This document shows positions 4,000 through 54,603 of a stretch of DNA of 64,000 bases, piece by piece. The DNA comes from Sphyrna mokarran (lineage: Eukaryota): positions 34,968,001-35,032,000 of the forward strand of contig JAGIQG010000013.1 of the NCBI GenBank assembly GCA_024679065.1. The letters are read 5' to 3'. A program made the position numbers and the translations under genes. Numbering within the stretch: the stretch's first letter is position 1; each line of letters opens with the position of its first letter. The notes below the pieces were generated by a model. It worked only from the letters and a program-made list of their open reading frames with translations. It had not been told where the DNA came from and searched no databases.

Positions 4000-4070
4000 T
4001 TCATTTGCTGATTCATCTATTGATATTTCACTTATTTGATTACCAACATTTTTGCTGTGGATCGATGAAT
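4000..4070 (-). CDS. Gene A exon: cytoplasmic segment (DSSIHSKNVGNQISEISIDESANE)
   Basis: cttaacag acceptor and GAA|gtaagt consensus donor; 71 nt, phase 1-0, open in frame after the TM exon; the final exon was not confidently identified. Confidence 0.62.
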
Positions 4071-4759
4071 CTGTTAAGTATATCATCAACATTAGAAATG
4101 TGTTAGAGTAACATTTTGTATAGTGGTGTATGTAATGAGATGCAACAATAAAAATAATCTATAACTGTGAAATTTGTTTCTATAAATTATTTGCGTGCAC
4201 ATTACTGGTGCTAATTACACCAAGTCATTCAACAAAAACATGCATTAAAGGCAAATTATAATGTTAATCAGACTGTAACCTTGATTTGACACAGCGCTGC
4301 CAGTTTGGATGTCAACACTCCATCTCTCACCCAACTGAACAGGTATTTAGGAACAGAAGGTTCTTAAGAAACAATCAATTACATGCAGATTGGTCACTGA
4401 TTGATTTTGACCTGTAATTGTAAAGTGTTTGGTGGTTTTCAGATTTGGTCAAGTTGTTAAGTGGGGTGGCATATAGTTCCAATTGCCAAGGATTCTACAT
4501 AAACCACTTGCTCCATGCACATGTGCATTACTTTGTCTCCTATTTAGCCTACTGCTTGACAGGGAGACTAAGCAGAGGTGACACAGAACAGGAAAAACTG
4601 CAGCAAGAGGAAGGACACGGTATCTCAGTAGGGGGAGCTATATTTACTCAGAATGTTCAGGTGGCATTCTTCTACCTAAGTTCATCAAGAAACAATATGT
4701 TTAACATCTCCAGTTGACTAAGGAGACCCCCACTGAAATCTGCCCTCTTTTGCAGCCTC

Positions 4760-5900
4760 AACAACCTTAGCAATGTGATGGAGGATGTGACATACTGAAA
4801 ACTTCATTCAATGCTGGTATCTTTAGCTTTGATGGTAGCGTACTGAGCCTGTGTAATGGCAAACTGAACTTGCTTGACTTAATTCTGACTTTTTATGGAA
4901 CCTAGAGGTTGAATGATTTCTATTTGTGGTGCAATAGAGGCTGAGACATCAGGCATTAGATGCTGGATCATGAATGAGTACACATGCATTACATGGAACT
5001 GGACAGCAAGGCCACCAAGCTCTGCACAAAATGTAGTACAAATTGATGCAGGTACCTCCATTGACAAGCCTACCATTGCACCAAGCATTTCAATCATCAT
5101 ATTCTTTTCAAAACTGCAATGTCTTCCCTGTTCAGTACTGCCACCCCATCTCCCTGTCTCACTTCTCTATCTTCTCTGAACAATATATATGCATAATATA
5201 AAGCATCCATTTTAAGCCATGATTCTGATATTGCCACCACATCGTATTCCTTGTGTGGTTCTAGCTCATCAACTTTATTTTTTAACTTTGTATGTCTACA
5301 AACATGCATTCTTAGTCTGTATTTGCATTCCTTGTAACTCTTCTTAGTCATCTTCAATCTAATATAGTACTAAATTCTTCCCTGGTACTATCCAACAGTC
5401 TCAATGAATACATCTTTTTTCTCGTTTTATGCTTGTATATGCTGCTGCCTATTCACCTGGAAATTCAGTTTAAACCATCTCCAATCACACTGGTGCACAT
5501 TCCTGTGTGTACATTAGTCCTGGTCTTATGGAGATATGACCTGTCCTCGTTGAATATGTCTTTTTGCTCCAGGATTAGTTCCAAGGCCCCAAGAATCTGA
5601 AGCCCTCCATCCTACCTCATGCCTCAAGCCAATCATTCATTCTTCCTATCTTCTTATTTCTATCAACATCTGCACAAACACTAGAAGCAATCCTGTACTT
5701 CTGAAAATATGCCTGTAAAACTTCAGTACCTGCTCTCACTACCATTGATACTGAAATGTAGGACAATTTTTGGCTTACTTGCTTCTCTTTGCAGCATATT
5801 CTTCATCCTTTTCATGATGTCCTTTCTTCTGGCACCAGACAGGCAATACACTATGTGAGATTCAGGATGACAATTGGAGACATGCCTGCCCATCCACTTC
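4760..5900 (-). mobile_element. Degenerate CR1 5' region (ORF1 esterase-like and ORF2 EN remnants)
   Basis: CLSGARRKDI...KIVLHFSIN (ORF1 SGNH-like); YDVVAISESWL...GDGVA (APE). Confidence 0.7.
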
Positions 5901-6405
5901 ACTATGGAATCTGCCTCTCTAACAAACACAAAATCCTGGAACTCCCTCTCTAACGGCACTATGAGCATACTTACAGAAAAATGGACTGCAGCAGTTCACC
6001 AATACCTTTTCAAGGGCAAATGGGGATGGGCAATAAATGCTGGCCTAGCCAGCAATACCCATGTAGCAGATGAATTTTTAAAAACCTCTTTGCTGTTCTC
6101 TCCCATTGGTACCCATTGGTGCCATGTCTGGACTGCACTCTTTCAAGACATTGTTACTCCTAGTAATATCCAGTGTTGAGTACCAGTTTGAGATGCTATG
6201 CACACCAAGGAGCCCTGCACTTCTTGCTTCTTCCTACTTTTCCGAATGGCCAACATCTACTATCCTGAACTCTCACCGCTTGCAGGAATATGATCGTTTT
6301 TGCTTTTCTTTGTTGGAATTATTGATTTTAATTTAATTGAATTTAAATATAATTTTCAATACAAATTAATTAAGTTACAAAATAAAATGTATTTTATCCA
6401 ATTAC

Positions 6406-6510
6406 CTTTTCCATTCTTCAGTTTACAGCACAAACTCTTAATGATCCAAAGGCAAACAGGTACAATTAGGATCAGACCAAGCAGGCTGAAGTAATAGTAC
6501 TTGGAAACAT
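6406..6510 (-). CDS. Gene A exon: transmembrane segment (DVSKYYYFSLLGLILIVPVCLWIIKSLCCKLKNGK)
   Basis: aattttgaag acceptor and G|gtaatt donor; 105 nt, phase 1-1, in frame with C1; about 20 hydrophobic residues followed by a basic/Cys stop-transfer. Too short for the ORF track. Confidence 0.78.
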
Positions 6511-6865
6511 CTTCAAAATTACAATTGAAATGTGAATCAAAATCATGAATAACAATTAATTATAATTATAAACATAACCAATGTTTATGCAATAATTTTC
6601 AATACAATTCTTCAGATATGTTATTTAAAGCACATATTGTATCAGGGGTACATTTAGCAACTGTCACTTTTGTTTTACTGGTGAAATGAACAAATAGGAT
6701 TCACTCAGCAGGAACTCCACTGAGGATTGATGTTGCAAATGTTTCCATTTGTACAAATAGTGATATTGTATCCATTATTCTATTTCTACTAATAATTCAT
6801 AAAGGAATGTAGCAGTCTTTCACTGGTGAGAGGAGAAAGCCTCCTCTACCACTGAGTCTTTATGG

Positions 6866-16059: not shown

Positions 16060-16359
16060 CTCTGCTATGGCTGAAACGTATCCTCTCTGGCTCAGGGAGT
16101 GTGATGTGTTGAACCTCACAAATGACGGTGGTTCCCTGGTCCCAGTGAGTGTCTATAATGTGCAGCCGGGAGCTCAGGTTGTAGCTGCCGTCACTGTTTA
16201 CTATCAGCAAGCCCTGTTCAGTTTGATAGGAGACATCTCCCTCAACAATCCAGGAGATGGTCAGATTACTGGGAAAAAAACCCGCAGCCAAACAAATCAG
16301 AGATGGAAATCCAACTGTTTCTTTCTCGGGATCCGCAGAAAGAGAGATTTCAGGTTTGG
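16060..16359 (-). CDS. Gene A exon: Ig C1-set domain
   Basis: tttag acceptor and G|gtaagt donor; 300 nt, phase 1-1. AKPEISL...LICLAAGFFPSNLTISW...NSDGSYNLSSRL...WDQGTTVICEVQH matches the C1 motifs C-x-x-x-G-F-[FY]-P and C-x-V-x-H. Confidence 0.93.
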
Positions 16360-17235: not shown

Positions 17236-17254
17236 CCATCGAGACCCAAATTCA

Positions 17255-17895: not shown

Positions 17896-17903
17896 CTAAT
17901 TAC

Positions 17904-18239: not shown

Positions 18240-18330
18240 CTGAAACATAAAATTATAACATAATAATTAAACCCAAATAATCTGAGTACAACCAGAATTA
18301 CTGTTAACTGGAGTCCAAGTAAATCCTTAC

Positions 18331-18376
18331 CTACGACACAGAGGCAGAGTTTGAGAATGTATCCAACTGCACCCAT
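18331..18376 (-). CDS. Gene A exon: signal peptide (MGAVGYILKLCLCVV-G)
   Basis: ATG at 18376; 46-nt hydrophobic leader ending phase 1 at a G|gtaagg donor; splices in frame to the VJ exon. Confidence 0.88.
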
Positions 18377-18424
18377 CTCTCTCACCGGTATTACAGAGCT
18401 GCTGGTATTCTGAAGAAAAGAAAA

Positions 18425-18505
18425 ATCACTGGAAGGTTCTTGTGGTTGTAGCGCCCGGTACGTCACATCATACTGACTGCCGGTTACAGACCGAATGGGA
18501 AGTTT
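18425..18505 (-). promoter_or_regulatory. Putative gene A proximal regulatory region (CRE-like, RUNX, ETS motifs)
   Basis: TGACGTA (18459-18465), TGTGGTT (18441-18447) and GGAAG cores (18431, ~18498) with retained CpGs just 5' of the leader. Confidence 0.4.
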
Positions 18506-19899
18506 AACAAAATACACATGCTAGTCTCTTCACTTCTATGCAATAAACATTTGTATTTTCTCCCTTAATGCAAAATACCGTTGAATTTATAGTGTCAATG
18601 ATCTTTATCATTTGATTTTAAATTATGGTGCAATCGCCCCTAGTCTGGCATCAACAACTTGTAATCAACATTCAGAATAAATAAATCTGTAAACCACACG
18701 AATTTCAGTTGATGGAACTGGCCTGGAATTCGGATAATACCGAGGCAATTTATTTAACTTATGAGACCATCTGAAAGGGTGATTTGTTACTGACCAATGT
18801 TCATCCAGCCCGAGGCCAGTGCATGCAAATTCCATTTGTATCACTCCCAGTTGTCCTCCCAAGGCATTTTTAATTCATTCATGTGATAATCATGGACGTT
18901 TTCATAGAATCATAGACTCAGAATCCCTACTGTGCAGAAGGATACCATTCGACCCATCCAGTCTGCAACGACAACAATCCCGCCCAGTTCCCCTACACTA
19001 AGCGGCAATTCAGTATCGCCAATCAATCTATTCAATATTCAGTCAGTATTCTTCCATTTTGTACAACGCTTGAAGGAATCACTGAGGATGTCAAGGGCAC
19101 AAAATGTCCACCACCAAGAATGGCTTGGCAGCTGCACTACTGATCGAGCTGGGCAGGTCCTACTCATAATCTGCTCATACTGCATCACTGGAATTTTCAC
19201 CTGAACTCAGATAACCCTGTCTCATTTTACCCCATTTCAATTTCCCCAGAAGCCTGGAGTTTAGATTTCCAATCTTAGTTTTTGTTTTAGCTTCATTAGA
19301 AACTAGTAAGTTCCATCTCCTTTATCCGTTTCCCTTTTTAATTAAGGCTGTCTTGAAACTACAAGCTTTAACACATTGCCTTCCAACATAATGCTGTGAA
19401 GTCAGATACTTGATCACAGTTAACCACTTCCTCTCCTCCTTCTCCCTGCGCACTTTCTTCTTTATGTTCCTCAAAAAAAATGATTGATTTCAAAATTAAA
19501 CTTGTTCTTCATTGATCAAAAGCATTCCACTAAAATGAGGGACAAGACTATGGAATAACATTTTCATGATCACTATAACTTCAGGTTGTTGAAGATCGTG
19601 GCTGGGCCCTGGAATGCTCGTGGGGACCTGGACTGGCCAGAAATCAATCTGGTGAGCAAAGTGCAGATAGTTCAGGGCTTCAGCATATGCCCAGAGTTCA
19701 GCAACTGTCAGAATTGGTGTGAATAAACCTCGTCCGCCTGAACTTTTAATCAGATTCGTGATTGTGACCTCTGCATTGCAGAGTGTGGGAGATTTGAGTC
19801 TGAACTCCCACTGAGGAAAATAATTGTAGTCTACACCAGTTTTTCCGCAAATTCAGCACATAGAGCTTTTTTGAGAGAATCACCCCCTATGATTCTACT

Positions 19900-20165
19900 T
19901 CATAGAACAGTGCAGAAGGAGGCCATTCGGCCCATTGAGCTTGCACCGACAACAATCCCAACAAGGTCCTATCCCTGTAACATCATATATTTACAATGCT
20001 AAGAGACAATTTAGCATGACCTAACCCTCACATCTTTGGATTGTGGGAAGAAACTAGAGCAACCAGAGGAAACCCAAATATGCAGAGAACAGTAAATCAC
20101 CTGAGGCCAGATTGAGCATGGCTGCTTAGTGCTGTTAAGCAGCAGTGCTAACCATCGTGGCATGC
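19900..20165 (-). mobile_element. HE1-type V-SINE
   Basis: Reverse-complement head, core and tail. Confidence 0.8.
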
Positions 20166-21375
20166 ACCTGGCCACCTTACCTTCACTTGGGATTTTGAGA
20201 TTTGTTGACATCGCATGCACCTACCTTTCACTGCACTGCTACCATCTTTCACATGCTGCTTTAACCCCAGAGCACTGCCAAAGCTACTTTTTCACACAAG
20301 GTTGTAGCAAAGTGGCTTCACTTAGTCAGCAGAGGCTGGTGTTTGTTGCAAGTAAGATTGCATTCTACCATGTAAGATCATTCTGGGGCAGGACAGAGGA
20401 GGCTGATTAGACAGAGTCCTGCTACGAGGGGTGCAGGCTATAGGTTTCATATGATGAAGGGAGGGAGTGAAGGGATGCCTGCCAGAGGAATGACTATAGC
20501 CAGGTGAGGATAATGGGACCAAGGAAGGTGGGGGGTGGTGGCATGCAGAGGAATGATTGGAAGTGGGGAACTGGAGCCTGAAATAGAAGGCTGGAAATGA
20601 GAAGGGGTGGATATGGTTTAATATTATATAAGAAAAAGAGCAGGAACATAGGATCATTTCTAAAGGAGAGGGTTGAAGGAATTGGGGGAATAAGTGTCAG
20701 CCAGTCATTTAATCCTGAGACTGAGACAATATGGAGAGATAAGGCAGTTATGAGGCTGTGTAGGACATGCTACAATAAAATGCAAAGCATGCACATTGTG
20801 ACCCCATCCAGGGATGCAGAAGGCCTGTCTGTGCAGTGACAGTAATGCACAGAATGGTGTGCAGGGCATGGATCAGTGCCTCACACACAAGGATCATGAG
20901 GCCGCTGGCTCAGTAGACTCTTCAGAGGCCATGTGGGAGAAATCAACAGTCAGGCTTATGGATTAATTCAATAGGAAGCCACATTATGTCCAGATGAGAA
21001 CATTGAGTTGAAAGTTCAGCTGAAAATAGTCATGGAAAATTAATAGGAAAATGAATGCATTGACATATAGTGGAGAGTCTTTTGCCATCACATCAATATG
21101 AGAAGGAAAGAGGGATTTCGCCATTAAAGGAATATTGGCAGGATATGCCATATGCAGGGTGGCACGAAGAGAGACTATGCCTAGCATTGTGGCATCAAAG
21201 TCTCTTATGGAGCACAAGGCTTCCAAACATTCAATACATCCGCGGCGACAGGGATATATTCAAATCCAAATAAGGTGGCCTGACAGTGTCGTGAATGAGG
21301 TTGAACTCACATGGCTGTGCTCAACTTTTGCAATCCTATTTGTGATTATGCTGTTAGGGAGCTGGAGGATTTATT

Positions 21376-21665
21376 CATAGAATCCTTACAGAAGGAGGCC
21401 ATTCAGCCCATCAAATCTGTACAGACCACAATCCCACTCAGACCCTATCCCCGTGACCTCATAAATTTACCCTGTTAATCCCCCTGACACTAGAGTCAAT
21501 TAAGCATGGCCAATCAATCTAACCCACACATCTTTTGGATTGTGGGAGGAAACTGGAGCACCCAGATGAAACCTACACAGACACACACAGTGACCTGAGG
21601 CCAGAATTGAACCTGGGTCCCTGGCACTATGGGGCAGCATGGTAACCAGTGTGTCACCATGCCGC
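21376..21665 (-). mobile_element. HE1-type V-SINE
   Basis: Reverse-complement head, core and tail. Confidence 0.8.
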
Positions 21666-22079
21666 TGCAGGATGATTAAGCACCCAGGATCCTTGATGTA
21701 GGATTGCAGTTGCAAGAATAGTATTGAATTAGTGCAGCCCAAGAACATCACAGTGCCTTGGAATGAGAGGTTGATCATTGCAGGGTAAGCTGCATTCGTA
21801 TATTTGATCCATCTGTCCATAGGAAGCATGAGGAATACAGAATGGAGGCTATAGATAATGCTGCTTTCCTAGTTGGCTACATTTGTAATAAGGAGGAGAT
21901 GAAGTGTCTCTAGCCATCTGGCAAGTCTCAGAGAAGAGCCATGGCCTGAGGCCTAGGTTCCAGAGACACCCAGGAAGACCCAGCAACTTAGAGGTGAGAT
22001 GTAACGCACAGAAGTGACTGGCACGGCCTTGAGTATACTGAAGACATATCTAATTTTTGGAAAAAAGAAAGTGAAAGTG

Positions 22080-22900
22080 TTGCAGATCTTTCCATCTGTT
22101 AAGGGATGTGGTGGCTCACATCTGCCACATTGTGGCAGCAGCTACTGATCTTCATCAACATGAAATGGTTCCACTCCCTGCAGCTGACGTGCAATCATCA
22201 AAAGATCCCCCATGTTTGTGTCAAGTTCTCTGAGAGTTCTCACAACTCTTACATGCTGAATCACTCCCAAGTGCCACAGATCCTTGAAGGTCCAAGCCAC
22301 TTACAGTGTTGGCTGCTGGGTGATGATGGCCCAGTGGTTAGTATTGCTGCCTCACAGCTCCAGAGACCCAGGTTCGATTCGAGCTTCCAGTGACTATCTA
22401 ACTGGAGTTTGCACTTTCTCCCTACGTCTGCAAGGGTTTCATCCAGATGCTCCAGTTTCCTCCCACACTCTAAAGATGTACGGATTAAGTTGATTGGCCA
22501 TGATAAATTGCCCCTTAGTGTCAGGGGGATTAGCAGGATAAGTATGTCGAATTACAGAGATAGGGCCTGGAGGGATTGTTATTGATGCAGTCTCGATGGG
22601 TCAATGGCTGCTTCTGCACTATTGGGATTCAATGATTCTATGAAGACGTGATTTATGACACTCATGTATCATCCTCAAAGTGCCTCGGGGCGAGATACGT
22701 TCTGTGACAAGGTCCATCATAGAGCAACATATTCACATCCTGAAGATACACTTCTGATGCTTGAACCTTTCTCCTGGTGCTTCCCTCGGAGGGTGTCCTG
22801 CATCATCATGCTGCTCTTTGCATTGCATAACCTGGCACTTCAAAAGGGAGATAGTGTAAAGATGGAGACATGGAGCAAATAGAAATTTATTTGGACAAGG
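22080..22900 (+). mobile_element. PIF/Harbinger transposase (HARBI1-like DDE) relic, split by a SINE
   Basis: FINMKWFHSLQLTCNH...SSHNSYML...WLLGD | FMT...IEQ...ILK.HF.CL...RRVSCII...ALHNLA. Confidence 0.8.
22325..22642 (+). mobile_element. HE1-type V-SINE inserted in the Harbinger transposase
   Basis: Head with GGTTCGATTC B box; core; tail. Confidence 0.85.
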
Positions 22901-23566
22901 AGCATTTGGAAACATCAAAACTTGAAGAGGATCAGGATAGAGACATTCCACATGAGGATGCCAGCCCCCATGGCAAGAGGCAGAAGATGTGCCTATGACA
23001 AGCTAATTGCTACTAGGTTTAAGGAGAAGTAGGTAATAAGTATGCATTTCTCCTGTTCTTTAGAGGCATGGAGGTGATTGGGAAGTCCTTTCCAATCTTT
23101 GATACTTCAGGCAAGCTCACCATTCACCTTGGAACCAATAACCATTAAGGGTAAAAAAGGGATCAGTATTGGAAAGGTTAGGATCCAATGTCACATATGG
23201 TACCCTTCCCATGTGAAAGTCAGCAAATGAGCATGCAACCTGAGGTAACTAAACATTGTTCTGACTTTAGCACCAGCACATGACTCTTTCAGCAGCCATT
23301 GTGATTTGGACTTGTTTACAGTAAACATAATGCTTGCCATGTGCTTTCACACTCACAAGGAACACAGCTCAGTGCTGATGTTACAGCGTTAAATGTCATC
23401 CTCCAAGACACAGGAGCACACATAATTCAATCGTCTGCTGCAGGACTTAAAAGAGCATTTCTGTCTCCACTTGCAATTTCAGGTTCTGACTTGACACATC
23501 CCCCTTTAGATGCCACAAGGGGCGAGTGACTAACATGACTTAACTATACCATAAGACCATAAGACA

Positions 23567-25072
23567 TAGGAGACTTTTTTCTCTGTCAGTTGTGCAACTT
23601 TGGAACTTTCTATCAGAAAACAGTGGAAGTCATTGAATGTTTTTAAGGCAGAGGTAGATAGATTTTTGTTAGAAAAGGGAATAAGAGGCTATTAGATCAG
23701 ATTACAGAATTTGAAACAATAGATCAGTCATGATCTAATTGAATGATGGACCAGGCTTGAGGGGCTGATTCTGATGTTAATTACATTGAGTGTTGCAGAT
23801 GCTAGTTTTTATCTTAATATTGATTGGGGGTTGTTTAGGTTGGCAAATGATAAATGCCTTTTGTAACATTTTCACCAATGTATCCACATTTTGTTATATT
23901 TTCAGTTTCTTGTTGTTGCCCGAGTAATAGGATTTCTCCATTCAAAACACTGAAACTCTGTCAAATTTCCCTAGCAAGCATCCCCTGTATTCCTGTGTAA
24001 TTCTCCTATTTAAGACATAGGAGCAGAATTAGGCCACTCAGCCCATCGAGTCTGCTCCACCATTCAATCATGGCTGATATTTCTCTCATTCCCATTCTCC
24101 TGCCTTTTCCTCATATTTCCTGACCCCTTATTAATCAAGAACCTATCTATATCATGACATGAATCTGATGGAATCAAAAGCAGACCATTAAAGAGTAGGA
24201 GCTAAATTCATCCTTGAGACAAGACGTTACACAGAATCATATACAAGAAGCATTCACACACAAGGATCATTCAATTACTTCAGGCACAGCATTCAGACCC
24301 TTGAGACCTGATTGCTATTATTGACTTCCATAACTATCTATTGCCACTGTTTTCATATCTTGAAGACCTTCTGCTACTCTGTGTACACAGGAAATCTCTC
24401 CTCCTTTCCACCAGCTCCAGCTCCATTACAGCATCAGAAAACCTGGATGTCCCTTCCACCCAAAGTCAGCTATTCTTTAATCTTTCCAACTCAGATTCAT
24501 AGATTAATACTAAAGTATGTTTTTGATTTTGTTTCAGATTTTAAAAATCAGTTATGTAGGAAGATTATGTTTGACTAATTGACTCCAAAATACCAACTGC
24601 TGGCCAGAACGTTCTCACAGGCTAAAATAGGAGAATTACACAGGAATACAGGGGATGCTTACTAGGGAAATTTGATAGAGTTTCAGTGTTTTGAATGGGG
24701 AAGTCCTATTATTCGGGCAACAACAAGAAACTGAAAATATAACAAAATGTGGATACATTGGTTAAAATGTTACAAAAGGCATTTATCATTTGCCAACCTA
24801 AACAACCCCCAATCAATATTAAGATAAAAACTAGCATCTGCAATCTCAATGTAATTAACATCAGAATCAGCCCCTCAAGCCTGGTCCATCATTCAATTAG
24901 ATCATGACTGATCTATTGTTTCAAATTCCGTAATCTGATCTAATAGCCTCTTATTCCCTTTTCTAACAAGAATCTATCTACCTCTGCCTTAAAAACATTC
25001 AATGACTTCCACTGTTTTCTGATGAAGAACGTTCCAAAGTTGCACAACTGTCTGAGAGAAAAAAGTCTCCTA
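23567..25072. repeat. ~445-bp high-identity inverted repeat (23567-24011 vs 24625-25072)
   Basis: Direct reverse-complement match; ~610-bp spacer. Confidence 0.92.
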
Positions 25073-25600
25073 ATTTCTGTCCTATTAGGATGACGCCTAA
25101 TTTTAAAACAGTGTCCCCTAGCTCTGGACTTACCCTCAAAAGGAAATATCCTTGTCAATACCATTCAAGATCTTATTTTCTTCAATTAAGTCACCCCAGA
25201 TTCTTCTAAACTGCAGTGTAAATGAGTCCAGTCTCTTGAATCTTTCCTTGTAAGAAGATAAACACAATCCAGGTATCAATCTAGTAAACCCCCTCTAAAC
25301 TGCCTCCAACACATTTACATCCTCACTTAAATAAGGAGACCAAAACTGCATACAGTATTCAAAGTGTGGTCCTGGTAATGCACTGTAAAACCGAAGCACA
25401 ACATTCTCATTTTCATTTTTAACCCCTCTCATGATAAAAAATAGCATTCCATTAGCATTCTTAATTACTTACTGTACCTGCACACTATCTTTCTATGACT
25501 TATGAGAACACTTAGATCCCTCTGCATCACATAATGCTGCAACTGTTGTCCTTTTAAGTAATACTCTGCTTCTTTATTCTCCCTGCTGTAGTTAACAACT
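24860..25600 (-). mobile_element. CR1 3' fragment
   Basis: SRARGH...FKAEVDRFL..KGIRGY; HFEYCMQFW remnant. Confidence 0.75.
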
Positions 25601-26309
25601 TCCCTTTGCTAGGTCTCCATTCGTCGGGACTTGCTCTACATCCTGTCCCATTAGAGGAGGTCATCTGATGTGGGAGGCATAATACAGCGAGGCAGCCTGC
25701 TTATTACATTTAAATGCATGGTAATAGGTTTCCTGACTTTTCGTGGCAGGAATCCCATTCTATCATTGGTTGTGGTTGGGTACAAATGAGCTGGGGAATC
25801 CCATCAGAATTAAACCTGTTTTGGGTTTCTATTCAATTCTCCACCCCTTCTGTCATTCCCAACTCCAAAGATGGGAGTAGAAATTTTGAGTACAGGTGTA
25901 TTCTCAGGTTTTATCTCTGGTTGTGGCTGCTAATCTCCGATTTTCATTTCCCATGTTACTATTTTCTCTTTCGCCTTGAATCTATCCCTTGTTTTATTAC
26001 AACTACCCAAATGATCCTCATCCTCTTTAGTTGTAATAAAGAGTCTAGTTATCATAAAGCTCTCTCTGACTTTCTCTAGTTATGTAATTTGTAAGGATTC
26101 TTGTCCAGCATGGTTCAGGTGTAGATTATCCTAATGGTACAGTCCACACTTTCCACAGTACTGGTGCCAATGCTTATCAAATGAGAACCCACTTCTCCCA
26201 CTTTATGAATCACGCATTCATCCCTCTGATCTTATTTGCCCTGTGTCAGTTTGCATATGGCTTAGGTAACAATCCAATGGTAACATTACCTTTAGGTAAT
26301 GATTTTATT

Positions 26310-26670
26310 TTGATTTGATTTGATTTATTATTGTCACATGTATCGACATATAGCGGGAAGTATTGTTTCTTGCACACTATACAGCCAAAACATACCATTC
26401 ATAGAGAAGGAAACAAGAGAGTGCAGAATACAGTGTTACAGTCTTGCTGTAGAGAAAGATCAACTTAATGCAATGTAAGTCCATTCAAAAGTCTGACAGC
26501 AGCAGGGAAGAAGCTGTACTTGAGTTGGTACATGACATCAGACTTTTATATCTTTTTCCTGAAGGAAGAAGGAGGAAGGAAGAACGTCCAGGGTGCATGG
26601 AGTCCATAATTATGCTGGCTGCTTTGCCAAGGCAATGGGAAGTTTAGACAGAGGCAATGGATGGCAGGCT
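26310..26670 (-). mobile_element. Rex1-type LINE 3' end with (ATTTG)n tail
   Basis: SFFPAAVRLLN-type end (AGCAGGGAAGAAGCTG on +) and a microsatellite tail. Confidence 0.55.
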
Positions 26671-27239
26671 TCTTAATTTAGTGCCTACCTCTTCATACTG
26701 ACTATGCAGAATTTCCTTCCTCATCCTGACTATAATTGGTACTTATATGCTCCATGAAAGCTGCATCCTCTCTCCATTCACTGCAAGTTCTTCTCCAGCC
26801 CTGAGAAAATGCCCCAAACACTGGCAGCAGACAGGCAACGCTGCCCTCTAAACTCTTGCTCTTTGCTGCAGAGGATAGTTTCAATCCTCTTCACTATACT
26901 GAATCACAGGATCGTTACAGTGCAGGTAAGGCCCGTCATAACTGCACAAGTCTCCAAATGAGCACTACAACTTAGTCCCATTCTCCTGCCCTTTCCCTAT
27001 ATGCTTGCGCATTGTTTCTATTCAAATAATCATCTAATGACTCCTGAATGCTTTAATTGAACGTCCCCCACACTTCCAGGTAATGCACTCCAGACTTGAA
27101 CCACTTGCTGTGTGAATAAGGTGACATCACATTTGCTTCTTTTGCAAATCACTTTAAGTCTGTGCCCTCTTGTTCTCAATCCTTTTACCAGTGGGAGTAG
27201 TTTCTCCCTATTATTCTGTCCAGCTCCCTCCCTTTACTC

Positions 27240-27800: not shown

Positions 27801-27821
27801 CACTTCTCGGTCAGATTCAAT

Positions 27822-30062: not shown

Positions 30063-32734
30063 ACCACATAATCCTTGGCTGGTGAGCAGATAAGATCAAG
30101 TGAGCTGGAACAATAGTGTCCGGGACTCACTCATGATATGCTAAAAATGTCAACAATATTGGAAACCAATTCACTCCATTCATGGGCACAAACAGATTTT
30201 GCCGGCATGATTCTCATTTTTCACCTCAAACTTTTAGAGATCTTAAATTTAGCTTTGAGGTCAGGATACCCTGTAAAATAAATGATCTGAACTCAGATGT
30301 TTAGACCTCACTATTCCAGCTGGCTGTGTGATCCTTGCCAACACACAAATTGTGGACTCGTCAACAGTTGTGGACTCGTCAAGTTTAAGGGCATTCAAAT
30401 GGTCAGTGGTTGGGCATATGGATAGCATTGGAATAGTTTAGGTTAGAGGGTCATAAAATTGGTTCCATTGGTCGATGCAACATCAAGGGCTGAAGGGCCT
30501 GTACTGCGCTGTAATTTTCTATGTTCTAAATTGCGCAGAGCACTGTTAAATCAGATTAGAAAAGGGCGGCTGTTAAACCGATATGTTTCACACTCACCTG
30601 ATCCAACACTGAGCAATTTTGGGAAGATTGCACCCAGTTTGTCTGCAATGGATCTTAACTCCTCTAATATGCCTTTCAAGATTCCAGATTGGCAAAAATA
30701 AATCCTTTCTTCAAAACCCAGAAGTGGTGGGAGTTTGGTCACATGGCTGCTAGAATTTGTAATATCGCCATGTGAAACAGAACTGAGGCAGTCTACCATT
30801 TTACCAATTAACAGATAGCAGCACAAAGAGTGGCGGTAAATTGACTGACCCTTATCTATATTGTACTACTGGAACATCAGAACTCATACATCTGTATCTT
30901 TAAAACCAATTAATCTCTCCACCTTCTTCTTTGGGGGATGTCATCCCTTCTAGGGTGATTGACCACCTTACAGCAGTTTCAGTTTGCTAATCTCTGAAGG
31001 GATACAGCATTGAACTTTTGATTCTTGACTTGGACTTACATAAAACCAAAACTCTTATTTTATTATGATTTTAATTGTATGAGTGCAAAACTCCTTTTGG
31101 CATTTTTTTTGTCTGTATAAAGTAAACCAACCCTCTTATTTTACCTTATCTGGTGCTTGCTGTGAAGTTATTAATAGAAGATTGGATAATTTGAAAATGG
31201 AAGGAATTGGGAAAATACACCACTGTTTTCTGTTCATGGATGGGTAGTAAGAGAAGAAATCAGGACTATTTAAGTTAATCCCCTTTCCATTCGTAACACT
31301 CTTAAAGTTATATCTAAAGTCAAAATAAAATCTAATATTTGCAATGCCCAACTTCTGATTTCCAAGACACTGAAATTCTAATTTCTGTGATTGAAACCGA
31401 GATACCAAGTTACTCTTGGTCTAACTTGCAAGTAGAATGTGTCCACAAAACTAAAGACAGGTGAGAAAATAATGCAAATTGGGGAGGGGAAAGAAAGCAA
31501 ATAAACAAAAGGAATAGTAAAACTATTCATTCAATAGTTTTCTTGTCCTTTGAACTTTATTCAAAAAAGAACGTTGCACATCAATAGATAAAGATAGTAG
31601 AATTACAGCATTAGATCGTTGCATGCTTGGCAAAAATGGAGCATGAAGTGCAGAGTTTTATATGAATGAAGGAAACATCGCTCCACACAACAATGAATTC
31701 CCTGTGATTTTCCAACACACTGAACTCTCCTGAGTAATTTAAGCAAATCACACTTGCGAATTTTCCAAGCTAATATCACCCTTGCATTAACATTTAAAAG
31801 CTTGACTACTCATAATAAAATGGATAAAAGGGAAATCCTTCTGTCTGACAATATGATCCTGCTTTAGTAAGGGCTTGCCCATGTCAAAGATCAAAGGATT
31901 CATCAGGAATGTCTACAAAGAGTCTGCTTTCACTTTATGATCACTGGATTCAATCAACTGGCTTTTATTAACTGTGTTGTCAGACATTACTGGAAAATGT
32001 GGAAGATTGTACATTTTGGCCAGAATCTCACTACCATTCATGCGGACAGGATTTTCCCATCTCACTACAGTGAACGGAAATTTGGCTAGCTGCCAAATCT
32101 TCTAACCTCAAAGCACTGGGAGTGTTGCCTGTGTCTTTCTACTGATACCTTAGAATCCCAATTGTGCAAAAGGGACTGATGTGAATTCTAAAGTGGCCAA
32201 AGCTGGAAAAAGTCTCTAATGTCTGTTTTCAGCATGTCCGGCCTGTGAGATCTTCCACTCCTGCCAAAGTCATTCGAAATTTGAATAGTTCACCACATGA
32301 TGGCAAGAAATCCACTGGAGTTGTGCCAGAACATCCCGGACTACAGCTCTATTAACACAGTTGGAACACTAATAACTGGCACCCACAAACATAAACGGGA
32401 TCATAAGTCAACTTACAAACTATAACAGTGCACTACTTACACCAATATAATTCCAAGGATTAGTTCAATCTTATAAATCAATTGAAATAACACCCACAAA
32501 GCAAATCACAAATATACGTTCCATCACAAAGCACATTATTGAAACAAAGTTTTGATGCTGCTTTTTCCTACTTCTGTTTGCAGAATCGTATCAATATGAA
32601 GACCTCTTATCACCTCTGGAAAAGTCAGTTTTAGCTGCTGGTGCACAAATGAGCCTCCGCTAGTATTTTTTTTATCTCTAGGGCTATACAATGAATTGCA
32701 GGAGCTAATATTCCATGGTCATTTTTGAATTTAT

Positions 32735-33098
32735 TTTTATTCAATCAGGAGACATGGGCGTTGTTGGCCGCTCAGCATTTATTGTCCATCCCTAGTTGCC
32801 TGGGGGCAATTGAGAATCAATCGCATTGCTGTGGCTCGACTCTCATGAGTTACATGTAGATCAGACCAGATAAGTACGGCAGATATCCTTCCCTAAAGGG
32901 CATTAGTGAAGCAGATGGGTTTTTCCAACAATTGATAGTGGTTTCTTGGTCAATAGTAATTTCTTAATTCCAGGCTTTTTTTTACTGAATTCAATTTCCA
33001 CTGTCTGCCATGGTGGGATTCGAACCTGTGTCCCCAGAACATTAACTGAATTTCTGGATTAGTAATCTAAAGATAATACCATTAGGCCATCACCTTCC
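32735..33098 (-). mobile_element. tRNA-derived SINE, SacSINE1/DeuSINE-like (partial copy at ~1190-1375)
   Basis: B box GGTTCGAATCC on the minus strand; central segment shared with 1190-1375. Confidence 0.6.
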
Positions 33099-33339
33099 TT
33101 CATGAAACGTTTAGTGATGAAGTCCACCAGAATCCCAAGACTTTGCTTTCATACCCATACTGTTGGTTTTCATATCCGTTAATTTGTACAAGTGAAGCGG
33201 CTTGAGTAAAGACATACTTGCCTCTTCAGTTTAAATGACAATACTGTTTCTTCTGCTTAAAATGATAAAAAGGTTTTAAATGTTTTTCTACTGAATAATT
33301 TGCTTGTGGCAGAGTGCAAAAAAATGAAGGAGAGAAACA

Positions 33340-33513
33340 TGAGGGAAAAAAGCCACTCTACTTGCTTAAATTAACAGTGGTTAGTATTACCAATTTAGAC
33401 CATTCTTCACCGAGAGAATTGCCAATCAAAATTTAATACTGGCAATTCTGTCAGCAAAGAATGGTCTAAATTGGGTAATACTAACCACTGTTAATTTAAG
33501 CTTTTTTCCCTCA
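33340..33513. repeat. Long near-perfect hairpin/palindrome (MITE-like)
   Basis: Arms 33364-33424 and 33440-33501, 15-nt loop, plus outer TGAGGGAAAAAAGC/GCTTTTTTCCCTCA. Confidence 0.9.
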
Positions 33514-34215
33514 CCTCCCAGAAATCTGCCTTATTCACCAACAACCACACACGTGAGATACTCTAGACAAGTAAACAAAGCCCTCTGTTTTGCACAGCTG
33601 GTATTAGACAGGATTTTATGAAATTTTTTGTCAATCCTTTTTTAATGTGATAGTATTTATATACCCTGAGAGAGGAAGGGTCCTGAGAGTTGACAGCAAG
33701 AGCAGCAGGTGGCAGTCAGCAGCCAACCCTTCAATTAAGGGAATTGTTGAAATTGACATTCCAGTTTGTGGCCTCTGAAAACTGCAACTCAATCTGGAAA
33801 ACTGAATTGTGCAAGTGTTGAGAACCTGAATTTGCGGCTGGTCCTATAAACAGATGTAGACTGCAATTTGCGCATTTCAGTAGCTCAGCTGTTTACCTGA
33901 CTGCTGGCACAATGAAAAGCGACATTGGGACTGAAGCTGGCACCAATGGATAGAATAAGCTGCCCTCATCCCCAGTTATTGATTTTCCAATGCGAACTAC
34001 CTATCTTCAAGGTGCAAATCGGAAAGAGTTAAATTACTCTCCACACTTCAGTGAATTTCCCCAAAGACAAACATATCTCTTAGCTATTCAGTGACTTATA
34101 AAGAAACAACAAACAACTTTTTAATTGTTTATGGAAATTTTGCAATTCATAGTGAGCAATGAAGAATTATTCTGAGAAGTTATTTGATGGCTTCAATGAT
34201 AAAACAGCTTTTGAC

Positions 34216-34265
34216 TTATAAATCTGAAGGATTTCCATCGTCTATGCGAATCATGTTTCCCCCAT
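34216..34265 (-). CDS. Gene B putative terminal coding exon (DGGNMIRIDDGNPSDL*)
   Basis: cctttactttcag acceptor; phase-1 open reading to TAA at 34218-34216; AT-rich sequence follows. Confidence 0.62.
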
Positions 34266-34519: not shown

Positions 34520-34551
<32 letters not shown>

Positions 34552-36068: not shown

Positions 36069-36356
36069 CTGTGAACACAGCTCGAGTACGGAGAGGCTCT
36101 TTCATCCACCGATGTTTCTTGGAGCAGATGTAATGGTTCTTTGAGTCATGCTTCTGCTTCAGGTCATGTTCAACATGGAAAAATCCATTGTTGTCTCTGG
36201 TCACGATTGTTTCAGAGAAGTCATTCAGAAGATTACCATGGCTATCTTTCCAGCTGACTTCTGGTTCTGGGTACCAGCCTGAAGATTGGCAAGACAGCAT
36301 GTCATTGCCACTTCCATCAGATTTCCATATGATACGGCTACCGTCACTACTTTGTG
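36069..36356 (-). CDS. Gene B exon: B7/butyrophilin-type IgC domain
   Basis: tttttttctag acceptor and G|gtgggt donor; 288 nt, phase 1-1. LSCQSSGWYPEPEVSW...DNNGFFHV...YIC matches the BTN/B7 C motif C-x-S-x-G-W-Y-P-x-P-x-V-x-W. Confidence 0.92.
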
Positions 36357-41740: not shown

Positions 41741-42076
41741 CCCAAACAGATAGATGTATTGATATTTCACCAAATCCATTGTTATTATACGCTCCGCACT
41801 TGTAGGTTCCTTCATCCCAGATATTGACATTCTTCAGTGTAAGAGATGCATCTCCTTTATTGACTCCATGAAGTTCGGTTCTCTTGGTGTAGTTTTTGTG
41901 CTGATTGCTGAAGTCATGCTCATTTCTTTTGTACTCATGCACAGTTTGATCCACACCTTCCTTCTGCCAGATCACTGTAGGATTATTGTCACCAGTGCTG
42001 TCAAATGTACACTTGAGAATGGCATGTTTGCCAATCTCTACAGCAATGTGCTCCTCAGGGGCAACAATGAATGTCT
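41741..42076 (-). CDS. Gene B exon: B7/butyrophilin-family IgV domain
   Basis: cccttgtgcag acceptor and G|gtatgt donor; 336 nt, phase 1-1. ETFIVAPEEHIAVEIGKHAILKC...VIWQK...VHEY...QHKNYTKRTEL...GDASLTLKNVNIWDEGTYKC is a typical B7/BTN V. Confidence 0.92.
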
Positions 42077-51929: not shown

Positions 51930-53478
51930 ATGTAATAACCACTGAGGAATCTCACTGCTCTCCATCATAGGAAAAACCCTCGTAAGAGTCCTGCTAAATC
52001 ATTTGCTCACTCATCTGGAGTTAGGCCTGCTTCCAGTCACAGTGTGACTTCCGCAAAGGTCATGAAACTACTGACATGATTTTTGCTGTGCACCAACTTC
52101 AGGAGAAGAGTCAGGAGCAGAATCGTGAGCTCTACACGACCTTTGTTGACCTTGCAAAAGCCTTCGACACTGTAAGCCGATAAGGCTTGTGGAGGATCAT
52201 GTCAAAGTTCGGCTGCCCCCCCAAATTCATTCAGGTGGTATGCCAGTTCTATGGTGGCATGAGGGCCAGAGTACTGGATGGCGGAGAATCCACTGAGGCA
52301 TTCCCAGTCACCAATGGTGTCAAACAGGGCTGTGTGCTCTCACCCACACTGTTCAGCATAATGTTTACTGCCACGCTGAATGATGCCTTCCAGGACAATG
52401 TTGCTGGAATCAGCCTCAAGTACAGAGTGGATAGGAAGCTCTTCAACCTGAGGAGACTTCAAGCTATTACCAAAGTGAAAGAGACTGTTCTGAGAGATTT
52501 CCTCTTTGCCGATGACTGCCTGTATGCTGGCTCAGAGATGCAAGTCAGTATGGACAAATTTTCCACAGCTTGTGACAACTTTGGACTCACCATCAACATT
52601 AAAAAGACCGAAATCATGCACCAGCCTGCTCCTCGTGCACTGTACACAGAACCCATAATCACAATCAAACAGCAGAAACTACAGGCAGTGGACCAGTTCA
52701 CTTATCTTGGCAGCACCCTCTCTCAAGCAGTGACTGCTGATACAGAAGTTAACTGCAGAATAGCAAAGGCAAGTTCTGCTTTCAGTAGACTGCACTTCAC
52801 TGTATGGGAACATTGAGGAGTCAGCCCAGCAGCAAAACTGAAGGTCTACAGTGCCACAATGCTCATTACCCTCCTATATGCCTGTGAAACATGGACTATA
52901 CATCAAGATATGCAAGACAACTCAAGCATTTCCATATGACTTGTCTTTGCAGAATATTAGGCATCAGGTGGCAAGACAAAATACCAGACACTGAAGTTCT
53001 CTCTAGAGCATGTCTACCAACAGTCCACACACTGCTGATGAGAGCACAGACCTGGTGGGCAGGTCACCACATATGTATGTCAGACAAGCGCATACCAAAG
53101 CAGCTCTTTTTTTGACGAACTCTCTGTTAGAAGACGTTCGCATGGAGGGCAGAAGATATGTTTCAAAGACATACCCAAGGCCTTCCTGAAGTCGCTTGAC
53201 ATTGACACGACCACCTGGGAAACGTTGGCACAAAACCTGGCACTGCCTCATCCACAAAGGATGTCAAGCTCACGAAGCAAGATGTATTCCTGAAGCACAA
53301 CTTAAACGCAAGTTGCGCAAGTCCAGAGCCACCAGCGCAACAACTACAGGTCCAATATGTGCCAGGCCATTCTGTGTCCGAACTGGCCTGATCAGTCATC
53401 TTCAGACAAACCGCAACCATCCTCAAAATGACTAATGGTGTCGAGGTCCTCATGAATGATGGACGAACAACAACATTG
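51930..53478 (+). mobile_element. RTE-clade LINE, 5'-truncated, disrupted
   Basis: FVDLAKAFDTV, GVKQGCVLSPTLF, KLFNLRRL, LFADDC, FTYLGS, C-terminal C..C..GLISH, CAA tail. Confidence 0.9.
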
Positions 53479-54052
53479 TACAGAAGGCATTTTTTTTTAG
53501 AAAGAAGATGGAGAGCTCTTTGGAATAAAGAAGGACTTGCACGAGTTGCACTGTTCACAACCACAGGCCGTCCCAAAAGCGCCCAGCCTATGAAATATTT
53601 CTTGAAATGGGGTTGATATTATAATGCCACTATATTGGGGTTTGATAAAATCGTACCAAGGGTCGGCAAAAACAGATTACACACGGGATTAAAGTCATTG
53701 CGCCCGTGGAGTATAAACACCAAGACAGATCGCCCCTTCAACCTCTCCCCAAACTCCCTCCAACACGCGTCAGTTGGGCCGAACGGCCTGCTTCCATGCT
53801 AGAACGAGTTCTTCCACGGCCATGCAGCATTCTACAATACATTATAAAATCTCTATAACATATCTGTCACCTGGACAATTAAAAACTTAATATGTTTATG
53901 AGCATTTTCTATAGCGATTGCTCTACATCCACAACGTTACAACAGTCTACTTGATGGAAAAGCAACACAGATCACATATCGGTCACATATTATATCCAGT
54001 TAATTATAATCATGCAGGTAACATCTACAGGTAACATTGAATAAAAACTTAC

Positions 54053-54140
54053 ATTGCTGCTCAATCTTGTTCGATTTAACTGCGGAACAATCGCACTTCT
54101 GACTCTACGACCTGCGGAACCAACTGAGACTGGGAGAGGT
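54053..54140 (-). other. Gene B putative first exon (5' UTR ending in AT of a split start codon)
   Basis: GCAGCAAT|gtaagt donor in a CpG-retaining region; splicing to 46399 gives GCA AT|G ATG CCA, an in-frame ATG; 5' end approximate. Confidence 0.55.
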
Positions 54141-54580
54141 GCTATCCGGAGTTGAGTGCAAGCGCCTATTGAAAAGCTGCTATATGCAGTCATCACTTGT
54201 TTCGAGGCAGAAGAATATTTTGCAGGTTACCAACCGAGTGTCTGTACTTCCCCTTAAACTGATAATCAGTTTAAAACCGGATATAATATTTCAGTGTGGA
54301 TATCGGCAGCTTTTAGTGCATTTCTAATCACATTGATATTTACAAGTCACAATTACTTGAATAATTAAGTATAGCGCCGGGACAGTTAATCATTAGATTG
54401 ACGCTAAGATTTGTGTGATAAATTACTGCACATATAAATATAACCGAATGAGTCCAAAACACGGCTTTAAGTGCATACTTAATGAATTTAAAGCACCCAA
54501 TATATATGTGAATGTGTGAAATTATATACTTTAAATATTCCTTTGGCCCGAGTAGGCACATGGGAAACTGCGTGGTTAGA

Positions 54581-54603
54581 GAAAGAGAATCGAAACTGAA
54601 ACC
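54581..54603. promoter_or_regulatory. ISRE/IRF element upstream of gene B
   Basis: GAAAGAGAATCGAAACTGAAACC contains the consensus GAAANNGAAAC (54592-54602). Confidence 0.55.

What the first reader, a model, noticed from the sequence alone, without database searches (positions are those of the whole stretch)
4000..54603. Candidate linked receptor-ligand module: a CD28/antigen-receptor hybrid (VJ-C1-TM) beside an IFN-inducible soluble B7/BTN-like gene
Seen: two tandem minus-strand IgSF genes about 16 kb apart, separated only by TE debris. Gene A is L-VJ-C1-TM-cyt and gene B is L-V-C-tail. Established: B7/BTN proteins are ligands for germline VJ-type receptors (CD28/CTLA-4, NKp30-B7H6, TMIGD2-HHLA2) and for gamma-delta TCR. 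Inference: A and B may be a co-inherited receptor-ligand or receptor-decoy pair in a cartilaginous fish. Binding is not shown by the sequence.
Basis: partly seen in the sequence, partly recalled or inferred. Interest (0 to 1): 0.85.

Follow-up and report, generated by a model that had tools for sequence, protein, structure and literature searches.

The report
Shark B7-H4 gene beside SIRP-like receptor
Two intact immune genes sit 16 kb apart in this shark DNA, a secreted form of the checkpoint ligand B7-H4 (VTCN1) and a SIRP-alpha-like inhibitory receptor, and nothing yet shows that they bind each other.

Summary
Two minus-strand IgSF genes lie 15.8 kb apart, and only decayed LINE fragments and repeats were detected between them.

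Gene B (46398-34216) has four coding exons: leader, V, C and a 16-residue tail, 240 codons in all. It is the shark VTCN1/B7-H4 gene. Nine shark orthologues share the same anchorless architecture and the same hydrophilic tail.

Gene A (18376-4000, continuing beyond the window start) has a split leader, a germline-joined VJ exon, one C1 exon, a TM exon and a first cytoplasmic exon. Orthologues exist in sharks and rays under automatic SIRP-alpha/beta-like or Ig-kappa-like names. Their tails carry two invariant tyrosine motifs of ITIM/ITSM type.

The "CD28 hybrid" label is not supported. "IFN-inducible" rests on one ISRE-plus-TATA-like site 8 kb upstream and has no RNA evidence.

A and B lie on the same chromosome record in 5 of 5 other sharks where both were found.

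Receptor-ligand pairing remains a positional guess, at about 0.1. It has some interest because the B7-H4 receptor is still unidentified.

First readers of this scan noted other VJ-C1-TM genes on other pieces of this genome. Those notes are unchecked.

The parts
18331..18376 (-). Gene A leader exon (15 codons + 1 base, phase 1 donor G|GTAAGG); split-leader layout
   Evidence: 11/15 identical to Mustelus asterias P0112
17904..18239 (-). Gene A germline-joined VJ exon (V-set; ends ...FVGEGTKLNIQ, then GT donor)
   Evidence: Pfam V-set 8.5e-11; 93/111 identical to P0112; single exon read directly
16060..16359 (-). Gene A C1-set constant-domain exon
   Evidence: Pfam C1-set 2.4e-15; PDB IgA1 6.1e-25, UrIg2 1e-23; 79/99 identical to P0112
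6406..6510 (-). Gene A short stalk + transmembrane + juxtamembrane exon; no charged residue in the membrane span
   Evidence: 34/34 identical to P0112
4000..4070 (-). Gene A first cytoplasmic exon (phase-0 donor); the rest of the tail lies beyond the window start
   Evidence: 19/23 identical to P0112
6905..9361 (+). LINE (endonuclease/RT ORF fragments) inside the C1-TM intron of gene A, antisense to the gene
18377..34215 (.). Intergenic 15.8 kb: repeats and decayed LINE RT/tail fragments; no Ig exon and no Pfam domain in the 10 ORFs submitted
34216..34265 (-). Gene B last exon: 16-residue hydrophilic tail and TAA stop; no membrane anchor
   Evidence: tail conserved in 9 shark orthologues
36069..36356 (-). 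Gene B IgC exon (butyrophilin/B7-type)
   Evidence: Pfam C2-set_3 4.3e-17; BTNL8, CD276, BTN1A1; 75/95 identical to Mustelus P0106
39626..41492 (+). LINE RT fragments inside the V-C intron of gene B, antisense to the gene
41741..42076 (-). Gene B IgV exon, closest solved V domain = human VTCN1/B7-H4
   Evidence: Pfam V-set 3.4e-14; 4gos 3.7e-14; 87/111 identical to P0106
46350..46398 (-). Gene B leader exon (16 codons + 1 base, donor G|GTAAGT); an acceptor-like ...tttttcag lies 1 base before the ATG, so an upstream non-coding exon is possible
54520..54603 (-). ISRE-like motif (54592-54602) followed about 65 bp downstream on the minus strand by a TATA-like box; candidate but unproven promoter for gene B; lies in a duplicated 2.14-kb segment

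Best explanation
The window holds two neighbouring, intact immune-type IgSF genes from the shark counterpart of the human VTCN1 region. They are not shown to be functionally coupled.

Gene B is the shark VTCN1 (B7-H4) gene. It encodes a signal peptide, a B7-H4-like IgV, a butyrophilin-type IgC and a conserved 16-residue hydrophilic tail. It has no membrane anchor, so it is most likely secreted.

Gene A encodes a non-rearranging type I membrane receptor. It has a split leader, a germline VJ domain that binds the ligand, one C1-set domain as spacer or dimer module, a highly conserved uncharged TM and a cytoplasmic tail. In all full-length orthologues the tail carries two invariant tyrosine motifs, one ITIM-type and one ITSM-type.

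Inferred mechanism for gene A: ligand engagement leads to tyrosine phosphorylation, then SHP-1/SHP-2 recruitment, then inhibition of the cell, as for SIRP-alpha.

The adjacency most likely reflects residence in an IgSF-rich block that is conserved as a chromosome segment across sharks. The ligand of A and the receptor of B are unknown.

Shown here: exon structures, domain types, orthologues, tail motifs in orthologues, and same-chromosome location.
Inferred: secretion, SHP signalling and expression.
For: Exons, phases and splice sites.

Domains.

Gene B:
- Its V exon is closest to human VTCN1 IgV (4gos, 3.7e-14).
- With the 9-species profile, the VTCN1 V domain alone gives 80 bits. PD-L1 V-only gives 47.7 and MOG about 48.
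- 6 of 6 candidates and 8 proteins at E <= 1e-8 among 132 candidates are the same family. All named ones are called VTCN1 or VTCN1-like.
- All are 237-244 aa with the same tail and no hydrophobic C-terminus.

Gene A:
- The best of 98 hits (E <= 0.001) in the library of 1.84 billion representative proteins are elasmobranch proteins at 65, 63, 56 and 47% identity.
- 15 proteins at E <= 1e-8 among 2070 candidates, from sharks and rays.
- Nine aligned orthologues have invariant tail tyrosines Y298 and Y326 with their flanks, and a conserved TM.
- The Atlas top two clusters are SIRP-alpha / PTPNS1-like at 0.96.
- The profile aligns V+C1 contiguously to SIRP-alpha 2wng at 3.7e-30.

Against: - No RNA evidence. 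No sequencing run was listed, so expression, the 5' exon of gene B and the C1-to-TM splice are predictions.
- The tyrosine-motif exons of gene A are outside the window. Its inhibitory nature here is extrapolated from orthologues that are 80-84% identical in the V and C1 exons.
- SIRP membership is not established. PDB scores to SIRP-alpha, UrIg2 and Ig chains are similar. A 2026 survey dates the SIRP family to tetrapods (PMC13262535, passages).
- The Atlas places gene B nearest to butyrophilin-like clusters, not to a VTCN1 cluster.
- TRIM45 next to the window is only an unchecked first-reader note.
Confidence: 0.7

Rival explanations
1. The secreted B7-H4 (gene B) is the ligand, or a soluble decoy ligand, of the adjacent VJ-C1 ITIM receptor (gene A). 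The two are kept together as a co-inherited receptor-ligand module.
For: - Tandem, same-strand neighbours 15.8 kb apart.
- Same chromosome record in 5 of 5 sharks where both were found.
- In Heterodontus francisci the RefSeq protein numbers are consecutive: VTCN1 ...839, gene A orthologues ...840 to ...842.
- Both V domains are conserved and not diversified across sharks, as expected for a self ligand-receptor pair.
- The B7-H4 receptor is unidentified and thought to be inhibitory (PMC11985252, passages).
- B7-type ligands bind V-type receptors (established knowledge, recalled).
Against: - There are no binding, co-expression or co-folding data.
- Accession order is not positional in general. 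The same pair differs by 271, 661 and 616 numbers in Scyliorhinus, Mustelus and Heptranchias.
- Gene A orthologues were found in five rays, but no ray VTCN1 was returned. That search is word-limited, so the blank is weak evidence.
- The known B7 receptor-ligand pairs are mostly unlinked in extant genomes (recalled).
- Gene A's closest named family binds CD47, not a B7 ligand (PMC2785349, abstract and passages).
Confidence: 0.1
2. Gene A is one chain of a two-chain, C1-paired antigen-receptor-like complex. Its partner is encoded by another VJ gene of the neighbourhood, for example the VJ genes noted beyond the window end. It would not be a self-sufficient SIRP-like receptor.
For: - C1-set domains normally pair in cis (PMC2785349, passages).
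- UrIg2 C1 domains dimerise (PMC12227049, passages).
- The TM exon is the most conserved part: 34/34 identical to Mustelus, with invariant Pro and Cys. This suggests intramembrane contacts.
- First-reader notes s1-887732 and s1-887808 place further VJ genes just beyond the window (unchecked).
Against: - There is no conserved extra cysteine in the ectodomain or stalk for an interchain bond.
- There is no charged TM residue for adaptor or partner pairing.
- The tail carries its own signalling motifs.
- SIRP-alpha has C1 domains and signals as a single chain (recalled).
Confidence: 0.1
3. One or both genes are silent relics (unexpressed or pseudogenes) in this species.
For: - No RNA run was listed.
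- Large LINE insertions sit in the introns of both genes.
Against: - All nine exons seen are open, in phase and flanked by AG/GT.
- They are 78-100% identical to Mustelus orthologues exon by exon.
- The LINEs are intronic and antisense.
Confidence: 0.05

Closest known systems
VTCN1 / B7-H4 (B7x)
   Same: - Signal peptide, IgV and butyrophilin-type IgC.
- The V domain is the closest solved V domain.
- NCBI names the shark orthologues VTCN1.
- An unchecked note places TRIM45, the neighbour of VTCN1 in human (recalled), just beyond the window.
   Different: - It has no hydrophobic C-terminal anchor.
- It ends in a conserved 16-residue hydrophilic tail in 9 of 9 shark sequences aligned.
- It is 237-244 aa long.
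SIRP-alpha (PTPNS1) family
   Same: - N-terminal V-set domain with a J-like G-x-G-T strand, followed by a C1-set domain.
- Single TM and a cytoplasmic tail with ITIM-type tyrosines.
- Top Atlas clusters.
- Contiguous V+C1 profile match to 2wng at 3.7e-30.
- Automatic NCBI names.
   Different: - One C1 domain in sharks; two in the three rays whose sequences were fetched (Hypanus, Mobula, Hemitrygon), by a recent duplication.
- PDB scores are no better than to UrIg2 or Ig chains.
- It sits next to VTCN1, not in a SIRP cluster (human SIRP location recalled).
- The SIRP family is dated to tetrapods in PMC13262535.
- CD47 binding is untested.
UrIg / UrIg2 (non-rearranging elasmobranch VJ-C1 genes; PMC12227049)
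   Same: - Single-exon VJ with a split leader, and C1-type domains.
- Elasmobranch genes that do not rearrange, on MHC-related chromosome regions (passages).
- The UrIg2 C1 domain is among the best PDB matches.
   Different: - UrIg/UrIg2 have three to eleven C domains.
- They form disulfide-linked dimers.
- No ITIM-type tail was found for them in the passages read.
- Gene A has one C1 domain and its orthologues have a tyrosine-motif tail.
PRARP genes (Fu et al. 2019, J Immunol; cited in PMC10751288; paper itself not held, abstract recalled)
   Same: Non-rearranging VJ receptors with a V-C1 layout in most vertebrates and a potential ITIM (recalled).
   Different: - They are reported from bony fish to birds (recalled).
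- No PRARP sequence was available here, so the relationship is untested.
- Amphibian V-C1-ITIM hits P0042 and P0065 share only 29-37% of the V domain. Their tails gave no phmmer match below 1e-3.
CD28 / CTLA-4
   Same: A V-type domain with a J-like G strand on a signalling receptor. This receptor family binds B7 ligands.
   Different: - A C1 domain is present.
- There is no stalk cysteine and no proline-run FG loop.
- None is among the 60 PDB matches shown.

Membership tests
VTCN1 / B7-H4 | Signal peptide + IgV + B7/butyrophilin-type IgC ectodomain | tested here: met
VTCN1 / B7-H4 | V domain closer to VTCN1 than to other B7/BTN V domains | tested here: met
   4gos is the best hit at 3.7e-14. 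With the profile, VTCN1 V-only gives 80 bits, PD-L1 V-only 47.7 and MOG about 48. No tree was built, and the Atlas puts butyrophilin-like clusters first.
VTCN1 / B7-H4 | Hydrophobic C-terminal membrane anchor | tested here: not met
   The last exon encodes 16 hydrophilic residues and a stop. The same holds in 9 of 9 shark orthologues.
VTCN1 / B7-H4 | Conserved position beside TRIM45 | not tested
   TRIM45 lies outside the window. The only source is the unchecked note s1-887732. The human gene order is recalled.
SIRP family | N-terminal V-set domain with a J-like strand followed by C1-set domain(s) | tested here: met
   Sharks have one C1, where SIRP-alpha has two.
SIRP family | Single TM and cytoplasmic ITIM tyrosines (SIRP-alpha type) | tested here: inconclusive
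   The TM is present in the window. The ITIM/ITSM-type motifs are invariant in orthologues, but their exons are outside the window.
SIRP family | Specific sequence kinship to SIRPs above other VJ-C1 proteins | tested here: inconclusive
   SIRP-alpha scores 3.7e-30 against UrIg2 at 2.6e-31 and Ig heavy chains at about 1e-33. The Atlas top clusters are SIRP. No tree with SIRP references was possible.
SIRP family | Binds CD47 | not testable with these tools
   Needs a binding assay.
CD28 / CTLA-4 family | Single IgV ectodomain, stalk cysteine homodimer, proline-rich FG loop that contacts B7 (features recalled) | tested here: not met
   A C1 exon follows the V exon. The stalk has no Cys. The FG region reads ...VAPKPWKNFVGEGT..., with no proline run. 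No CD28 or CTLA-4 entry is in the 60 shown of 193 PDB matches.
Rearranging antigen receptors (Ig/TCR) | V and J in separate gene segments | tested here: not met
   V through the J-like strand is one exon that ends in a GT donor. No search for recombination signal sequences was run.
UrIg / UrIg2 | VJ followed by three or more C1-type domains | tested here: not met
   Only one C1-like segment was found between the VJ and TM exons.

The most novel reading that the evidence does not exclude
The conserved elasmobranch VJ-C1 ITIM receptor encoded directly beside VTCN1 is the original receptor of B7-H4. Sharks use a secreted B7-H4 as a soluble inhibitory ligand for it. The pair would be a surviving linked receptor-ligand module of the MHC-paralogous region. 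It would point to SIRP-like V-C1 receptors as candidates for the still unidentified B7-H4 receptor of mammals.
Probability: 0.1. Interest if true: 0.85.

Novelty: new variant of a known kind. Interest (0 to 1): 0.45.

Why it matters
B7-H4 is a clinically targeted immune checkpoint whose receptor is still unidentified (PMC11985252).

A naturally anchorless B7-H4 conserved in nine shark species, with an inhibitory-type V-C1 receptor as its immediate neighbour, gives a cheap and direct binding test. A positive result would open a route to the receptor question. A negative result would still leave two useful facts:
- Sharks make B7-H4 as a secreted protein.
- Elasmobranchs keep a single-C1, SIRP-alpha-like, non-rearranging VJ receptor beside VTCN1. 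This bears on models in which antigen-receptor-like VJ-C1 genes predate RAG (PMC12227049, PMC10751288, PMC2785349).

Tried and rejected
RNA evidence. The look-up of sequencing runs on 15900-18400 listed no run, so read laying was never used. Expression, the gene B 5' exon and IFN induction stay untested.

I also looked at RefSeq accession order and judged it unreliable: consecutive in Heterodontus, but 271-661 apart in three other sharks.

Structure. The AlphaFold2 model of orthologue P0112 with 9 sequences had mean pLDDT 48.7. It was too poor for a fold search, so none was run.

Tail exons of gene A. phmmer of 11 relatives against all six-frame segments of 30 aa or more and lenient tblastn of four tails against 1-4100 found only the cyt-1 exon.

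ISRE. The pattern count is not above chance. The site nearest gene B has a TATA-like box after it, and the segment is duplicated. I kept it as a candidate promoter only.

scan_promoters_terminators uses bacterial consensus and was irrelevant here.

Literature.
- Searches found no paper on shark VTCN1 or shark SIRP-like genes among the rows listed: 15 of 39, 12 of 426 and 7 of 7.
- 'PRARP' returned unrelated acronyms.
- Ohta et al. 2019 and Fu et al. 2019 are not held.
- Supplements were not opened. Table S1 and fig. S1 of PMC12227049 and the supplements of PMC10751288 and PMC13262535 may list such genes.

Rejected readings:
- CD28 hybrid (see membership tests).
- UrIg member (only one C1 domain).
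- A rearranging receptor (single VJ exon).

Full report
What is there. The window has no N and is eukaryotic, repeat-rich DNA. Pfam calls them V-set (8.5e-11) and C1-set (2.4e-15) for gene A. For gene B it calls V-set (3.4e-14) and the butyrophilin-type C2-set_3 domain (4.3e-17). Reading the sequence and mapping orthologues gave complete exon models. Lengths, phases and AG/GT sites were checked without joining the exons.

Gene A exons:
- leader 18376-18331
- VJ 18239-17904
- C1 16359-16060
- stalk/TM 6510-6406
- first cytoplasmic exon 4070-4000

Gene B exons:
- leader 46398-46350
- V 42076-41741
- C 36356-36069
- tail plus stop 34265-34216 (723 nt in all)

Each exon was handled separately.

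Between the genes. The stop of gene B and the ATG of gene A are 15,839 bp apart. In this stretch phmmer with 11 relatives of both genes found no further Ig-like segment. In the whole window only six segments matched, and all six are the exons above. None of the 10 ORFs I submitted has a Pfam family. Of the bases, 14% repeat elsewhere in the window. Decayed LINE RT and tail fragments lie at about 25.2-25.6, 27.1-27.2 and 29.2-30.0 kb. LINE pieces also fill the large introns of both genes and the 48.9-52.8 kb region. "Separated only by TE debris" is a fair description.

Gene B is shark VTCN1 (B7-H4).
- Its V exon matches the human VTCN1 IgV structure best (4gos, 3.7e-14), ahead of CD276.
- Its C exon matches BTNL8, CD276 and BTN1A1.
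- The V-exon open frame found 6 of 6 candidates at E <= 1e-5. Five are named VTCN1 or VTCN1-like and one is an unnamed transcript-derived protein.
- The Scyliorhinus protein found 8 proteins at E <= 1e-8 among 132 candidates, all the same family.
- With a profile of nine shark sequences, the VTCN1 V domain alone scores 80 bits. PD-L1 V-only scores 47.7 and MOG about 48. Two-domain CD276 and butyrophilins reach only about 86 bits over V plus C.
- The Atlas search is less specific and puts butyrophilin-like clusters first.

All nine shark proteins are 237-244 aa. They end in the same hydrophilic tail, and the window's last exon encodes that tail followed by TAA. None has a hydrophobic C-terminus. 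No longer, anchored paralogue turned up within the length range searched. So sharks appear to make B7-H4 as a secreted protein. This departs from the anchored mammalian form (recalled), and I found no paper on it.

Gene A is a conserved, non-rearranging, SIRP-alpha-like receptor.
- The VJ domain is one exon that runs through a J-like strand into a GT donor. It is preceded by a split leader with a 91-bp intron. Flajnik et al. call this leader layout canonical for antigen-receptor genes (PMC12227049, passages).
- Against 1.84 billion representative proteins the V exon had 98 hits at E <= 0.001, 11 at <= 1e-10 and 2 at <= 1e-30. The clear relatives are four elasmobranch clusters at 65, 63, 56 and 47% identity.
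- A follow-up with the Scyliorhinus protein found 15 proteins at E <= 1e-8 among 2070 candidates. They come from eight sharks (with Rhincodon) and five rays (with Pristis).
- Their automatic names are SIRP-alpha (PTPNS1)-like, SIRP-beta-1-like, Ig kappa-like or Ig heavy chain-like.
- The window's exons are closest to Mustelus asterias: V 93/111, C1 79/99, TM 34/34, cyt-1 19/23.
- In nine aligned orthologues the TM (with invariant Pro and Cys) and two tail tyrosines with their flanks are invariant. One motif is ITIM-type and one ITSM-type, and further tyrosine motifs occur in most sharks.
- The exons for that tail are not in the window. For this species the inhibitory tail is therefore an extrapolation.
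- The membrane span has no charged residue, so there is no sign of adaptor coupling.

Family placement of gene A.
- PDB searches rank Ig chains, UrIg2 and SIRP-alpha/gamma close together.
- With the profile, SIRP-alpha (2wng) aligns contiguously over V and C1 at 3.7e-30, and UrIg2 scores 2.6e-31.
- The Atlas feature search puts two SIRP-alpha clusters first at 0.96.
- Hatherley et al. showed that SIRP-alpha is V-C1-C1 and argued that it is close to the antigen-receptor precursor (PMC2785349, abstract and passages). A 2026 survey dates the SIRP family to tetrapods (PMC13262535, passages).
- I therefore say that gene A works like SIRP-alpha and leave membership open.
- Weaker V-C1 relatives exist in Callorhinchus (35%), a caecilian (37%) and frogs, some with ITIM-type tails. 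Their tails gave no detectable match to the gene A tail.
- They may be the PRARP family of Fu et al. 2019. I know that paper only from its citation in PMC10751288 and from recall.

The CD28 comparison fails. A C1 domain is present. There is no stalk cysteine, and the FG loop has no proline run. None of the 60 PDB matches shown (of 193) is CD28 or CTLA-4; they are antibody light-chain V domains and shark VNARs.

"IFN-inducible". The finding's end coordinate is an ISRE-like 11-mer at 54592-54602. The window has 4 such matches against 1.77 expected, and 9 of 100 shuffles reach 4. On the minus strand this site is followed about 65 bp later by a TATA-like box. The leader exon of gene B has an acceptor-like site one base before its ATG. 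A non-coding first exon near 54.5 kb is therefore possible. The segment is one of two copies of a 2.14-kb duplication, and both copies keep an IRF-type motif. Without RNA data this is a candidate, not a property.

Linkage elsewhere. 
- Scyliorhinus canicula: 211,674,833
- Mustelus asterias: 91,901,885
- Heterodontus francisci: 126,457,832
- Stegostoma tigrinum: 82,076,947
- Heptranchias perlo: 83,457,822

That is 5 of 5 species in which both were found. In Carcharodon, Chiloscyllium and Pristiophorus only B was returned. In Hemiscyllium, Cetorhinus, Rhincodon and the five rays only A was returned. This shows shared chromosomes across four shark orders, not adjacency. Consecutive RefSeq numbers in Heterodontus hint at adjacency, but the same pair is 271-661 numbers apart in three other sharks. 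Accession order is therefore not a safe proxy.

First-reader notes place another VJ gene and TRIM45 just beyond the window end and a CD101-like gene 438 kb further. This would fit the human VTCN1 neighbourhood (recalled). I could not check these notes.

How it most likely works.
- Gene B: secreted two-domain B7-H4 (inferred from the missing anchor).
- Gene A: a membrane receptor whose conserved VJ face binds a conserved, probably self, ligand. Its phosphorylated tail tyrosines recruit SHP phosphatases (inferred by analogy).
- Whether B is A's ligand is open, and I put it at about 0.1. Proximity and the orphan status of B7-H4 (PMC11985252, passages) speak for it. The absence of any binding evidence speaks against it, as does gene A's presence in rays where no VTCN1 was returned (a weak blank). 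The usual lack of linkage between B7 ligands and their receptors (recalled) also speaks against it.

Verdict. Both genes already exist as automatic models in related species but appear unstudied. The anchorless B7-H4 and the single-C1 SIRP-like receptor are variants of known kinds. The pairing idea is cheap to test and would matter if true.

Noticed in passing
window 54144-54700 and 56282-56802: Two copies of a 2.14-kb segmental duplication, 82-93% identical in the aligned blocks. Each keeps an ISRE/IRF-like motif and a TATA-like box on the minus strand.
   Followed up: partly
P0118 (Heterodontus francisci isoform X2): This gene A orthologue isoform joins C1 directly to the cytoplasmic exons and lacks the TM exon. 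It is a predicted soluble or intracellular isoform.
   Followed up: no
P0123 (Hemitrygon akajei): A ray relative with the same V-C1 ectodomain but a different TM. That TM has an arginine near its start and is followed by a short tail without tyrosine motifs. It may be an activating counterpart, as in paired receptors.
   Followed up: no
P0101, P0004 (Hypanus), P0114 (Mobula): These ray orthologues carry two nearly identical C1 domains, an exon duplication. All shark orthologues seen have one.
   Followed up: no
window 6406-6510: The TM exon is the most conserved piece of gene A. It is 34/34 identical to Mustelus, where the V domain is 84% and the C1 domain 80% identical. It has invariant Pro and Cys across sharks and rays. 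The reason is unexplained.
   Followed up: partly
window 60506-60928 (+): A 140-aa lysine- and glutamate-rich ORF with no Pfam family. Its origin is unknown, and it may be retroelement-derived.
   Followed up: partly
window 21503-21868, 48445-48759, 54956-55276, 56913-57158 (minus-strand frames): These are repeated copies of a short element whose translation shares an '...ARDPGSIP...' stretch. It is probably a SINE-like repeat.
   Followed up: no
window 34450-34770 and 38541-38711: G-rich low-complexity tracts, seen as poly-Gly in translation, lie in a gene B intron and just downstream of its C exon.
   Followed up: no
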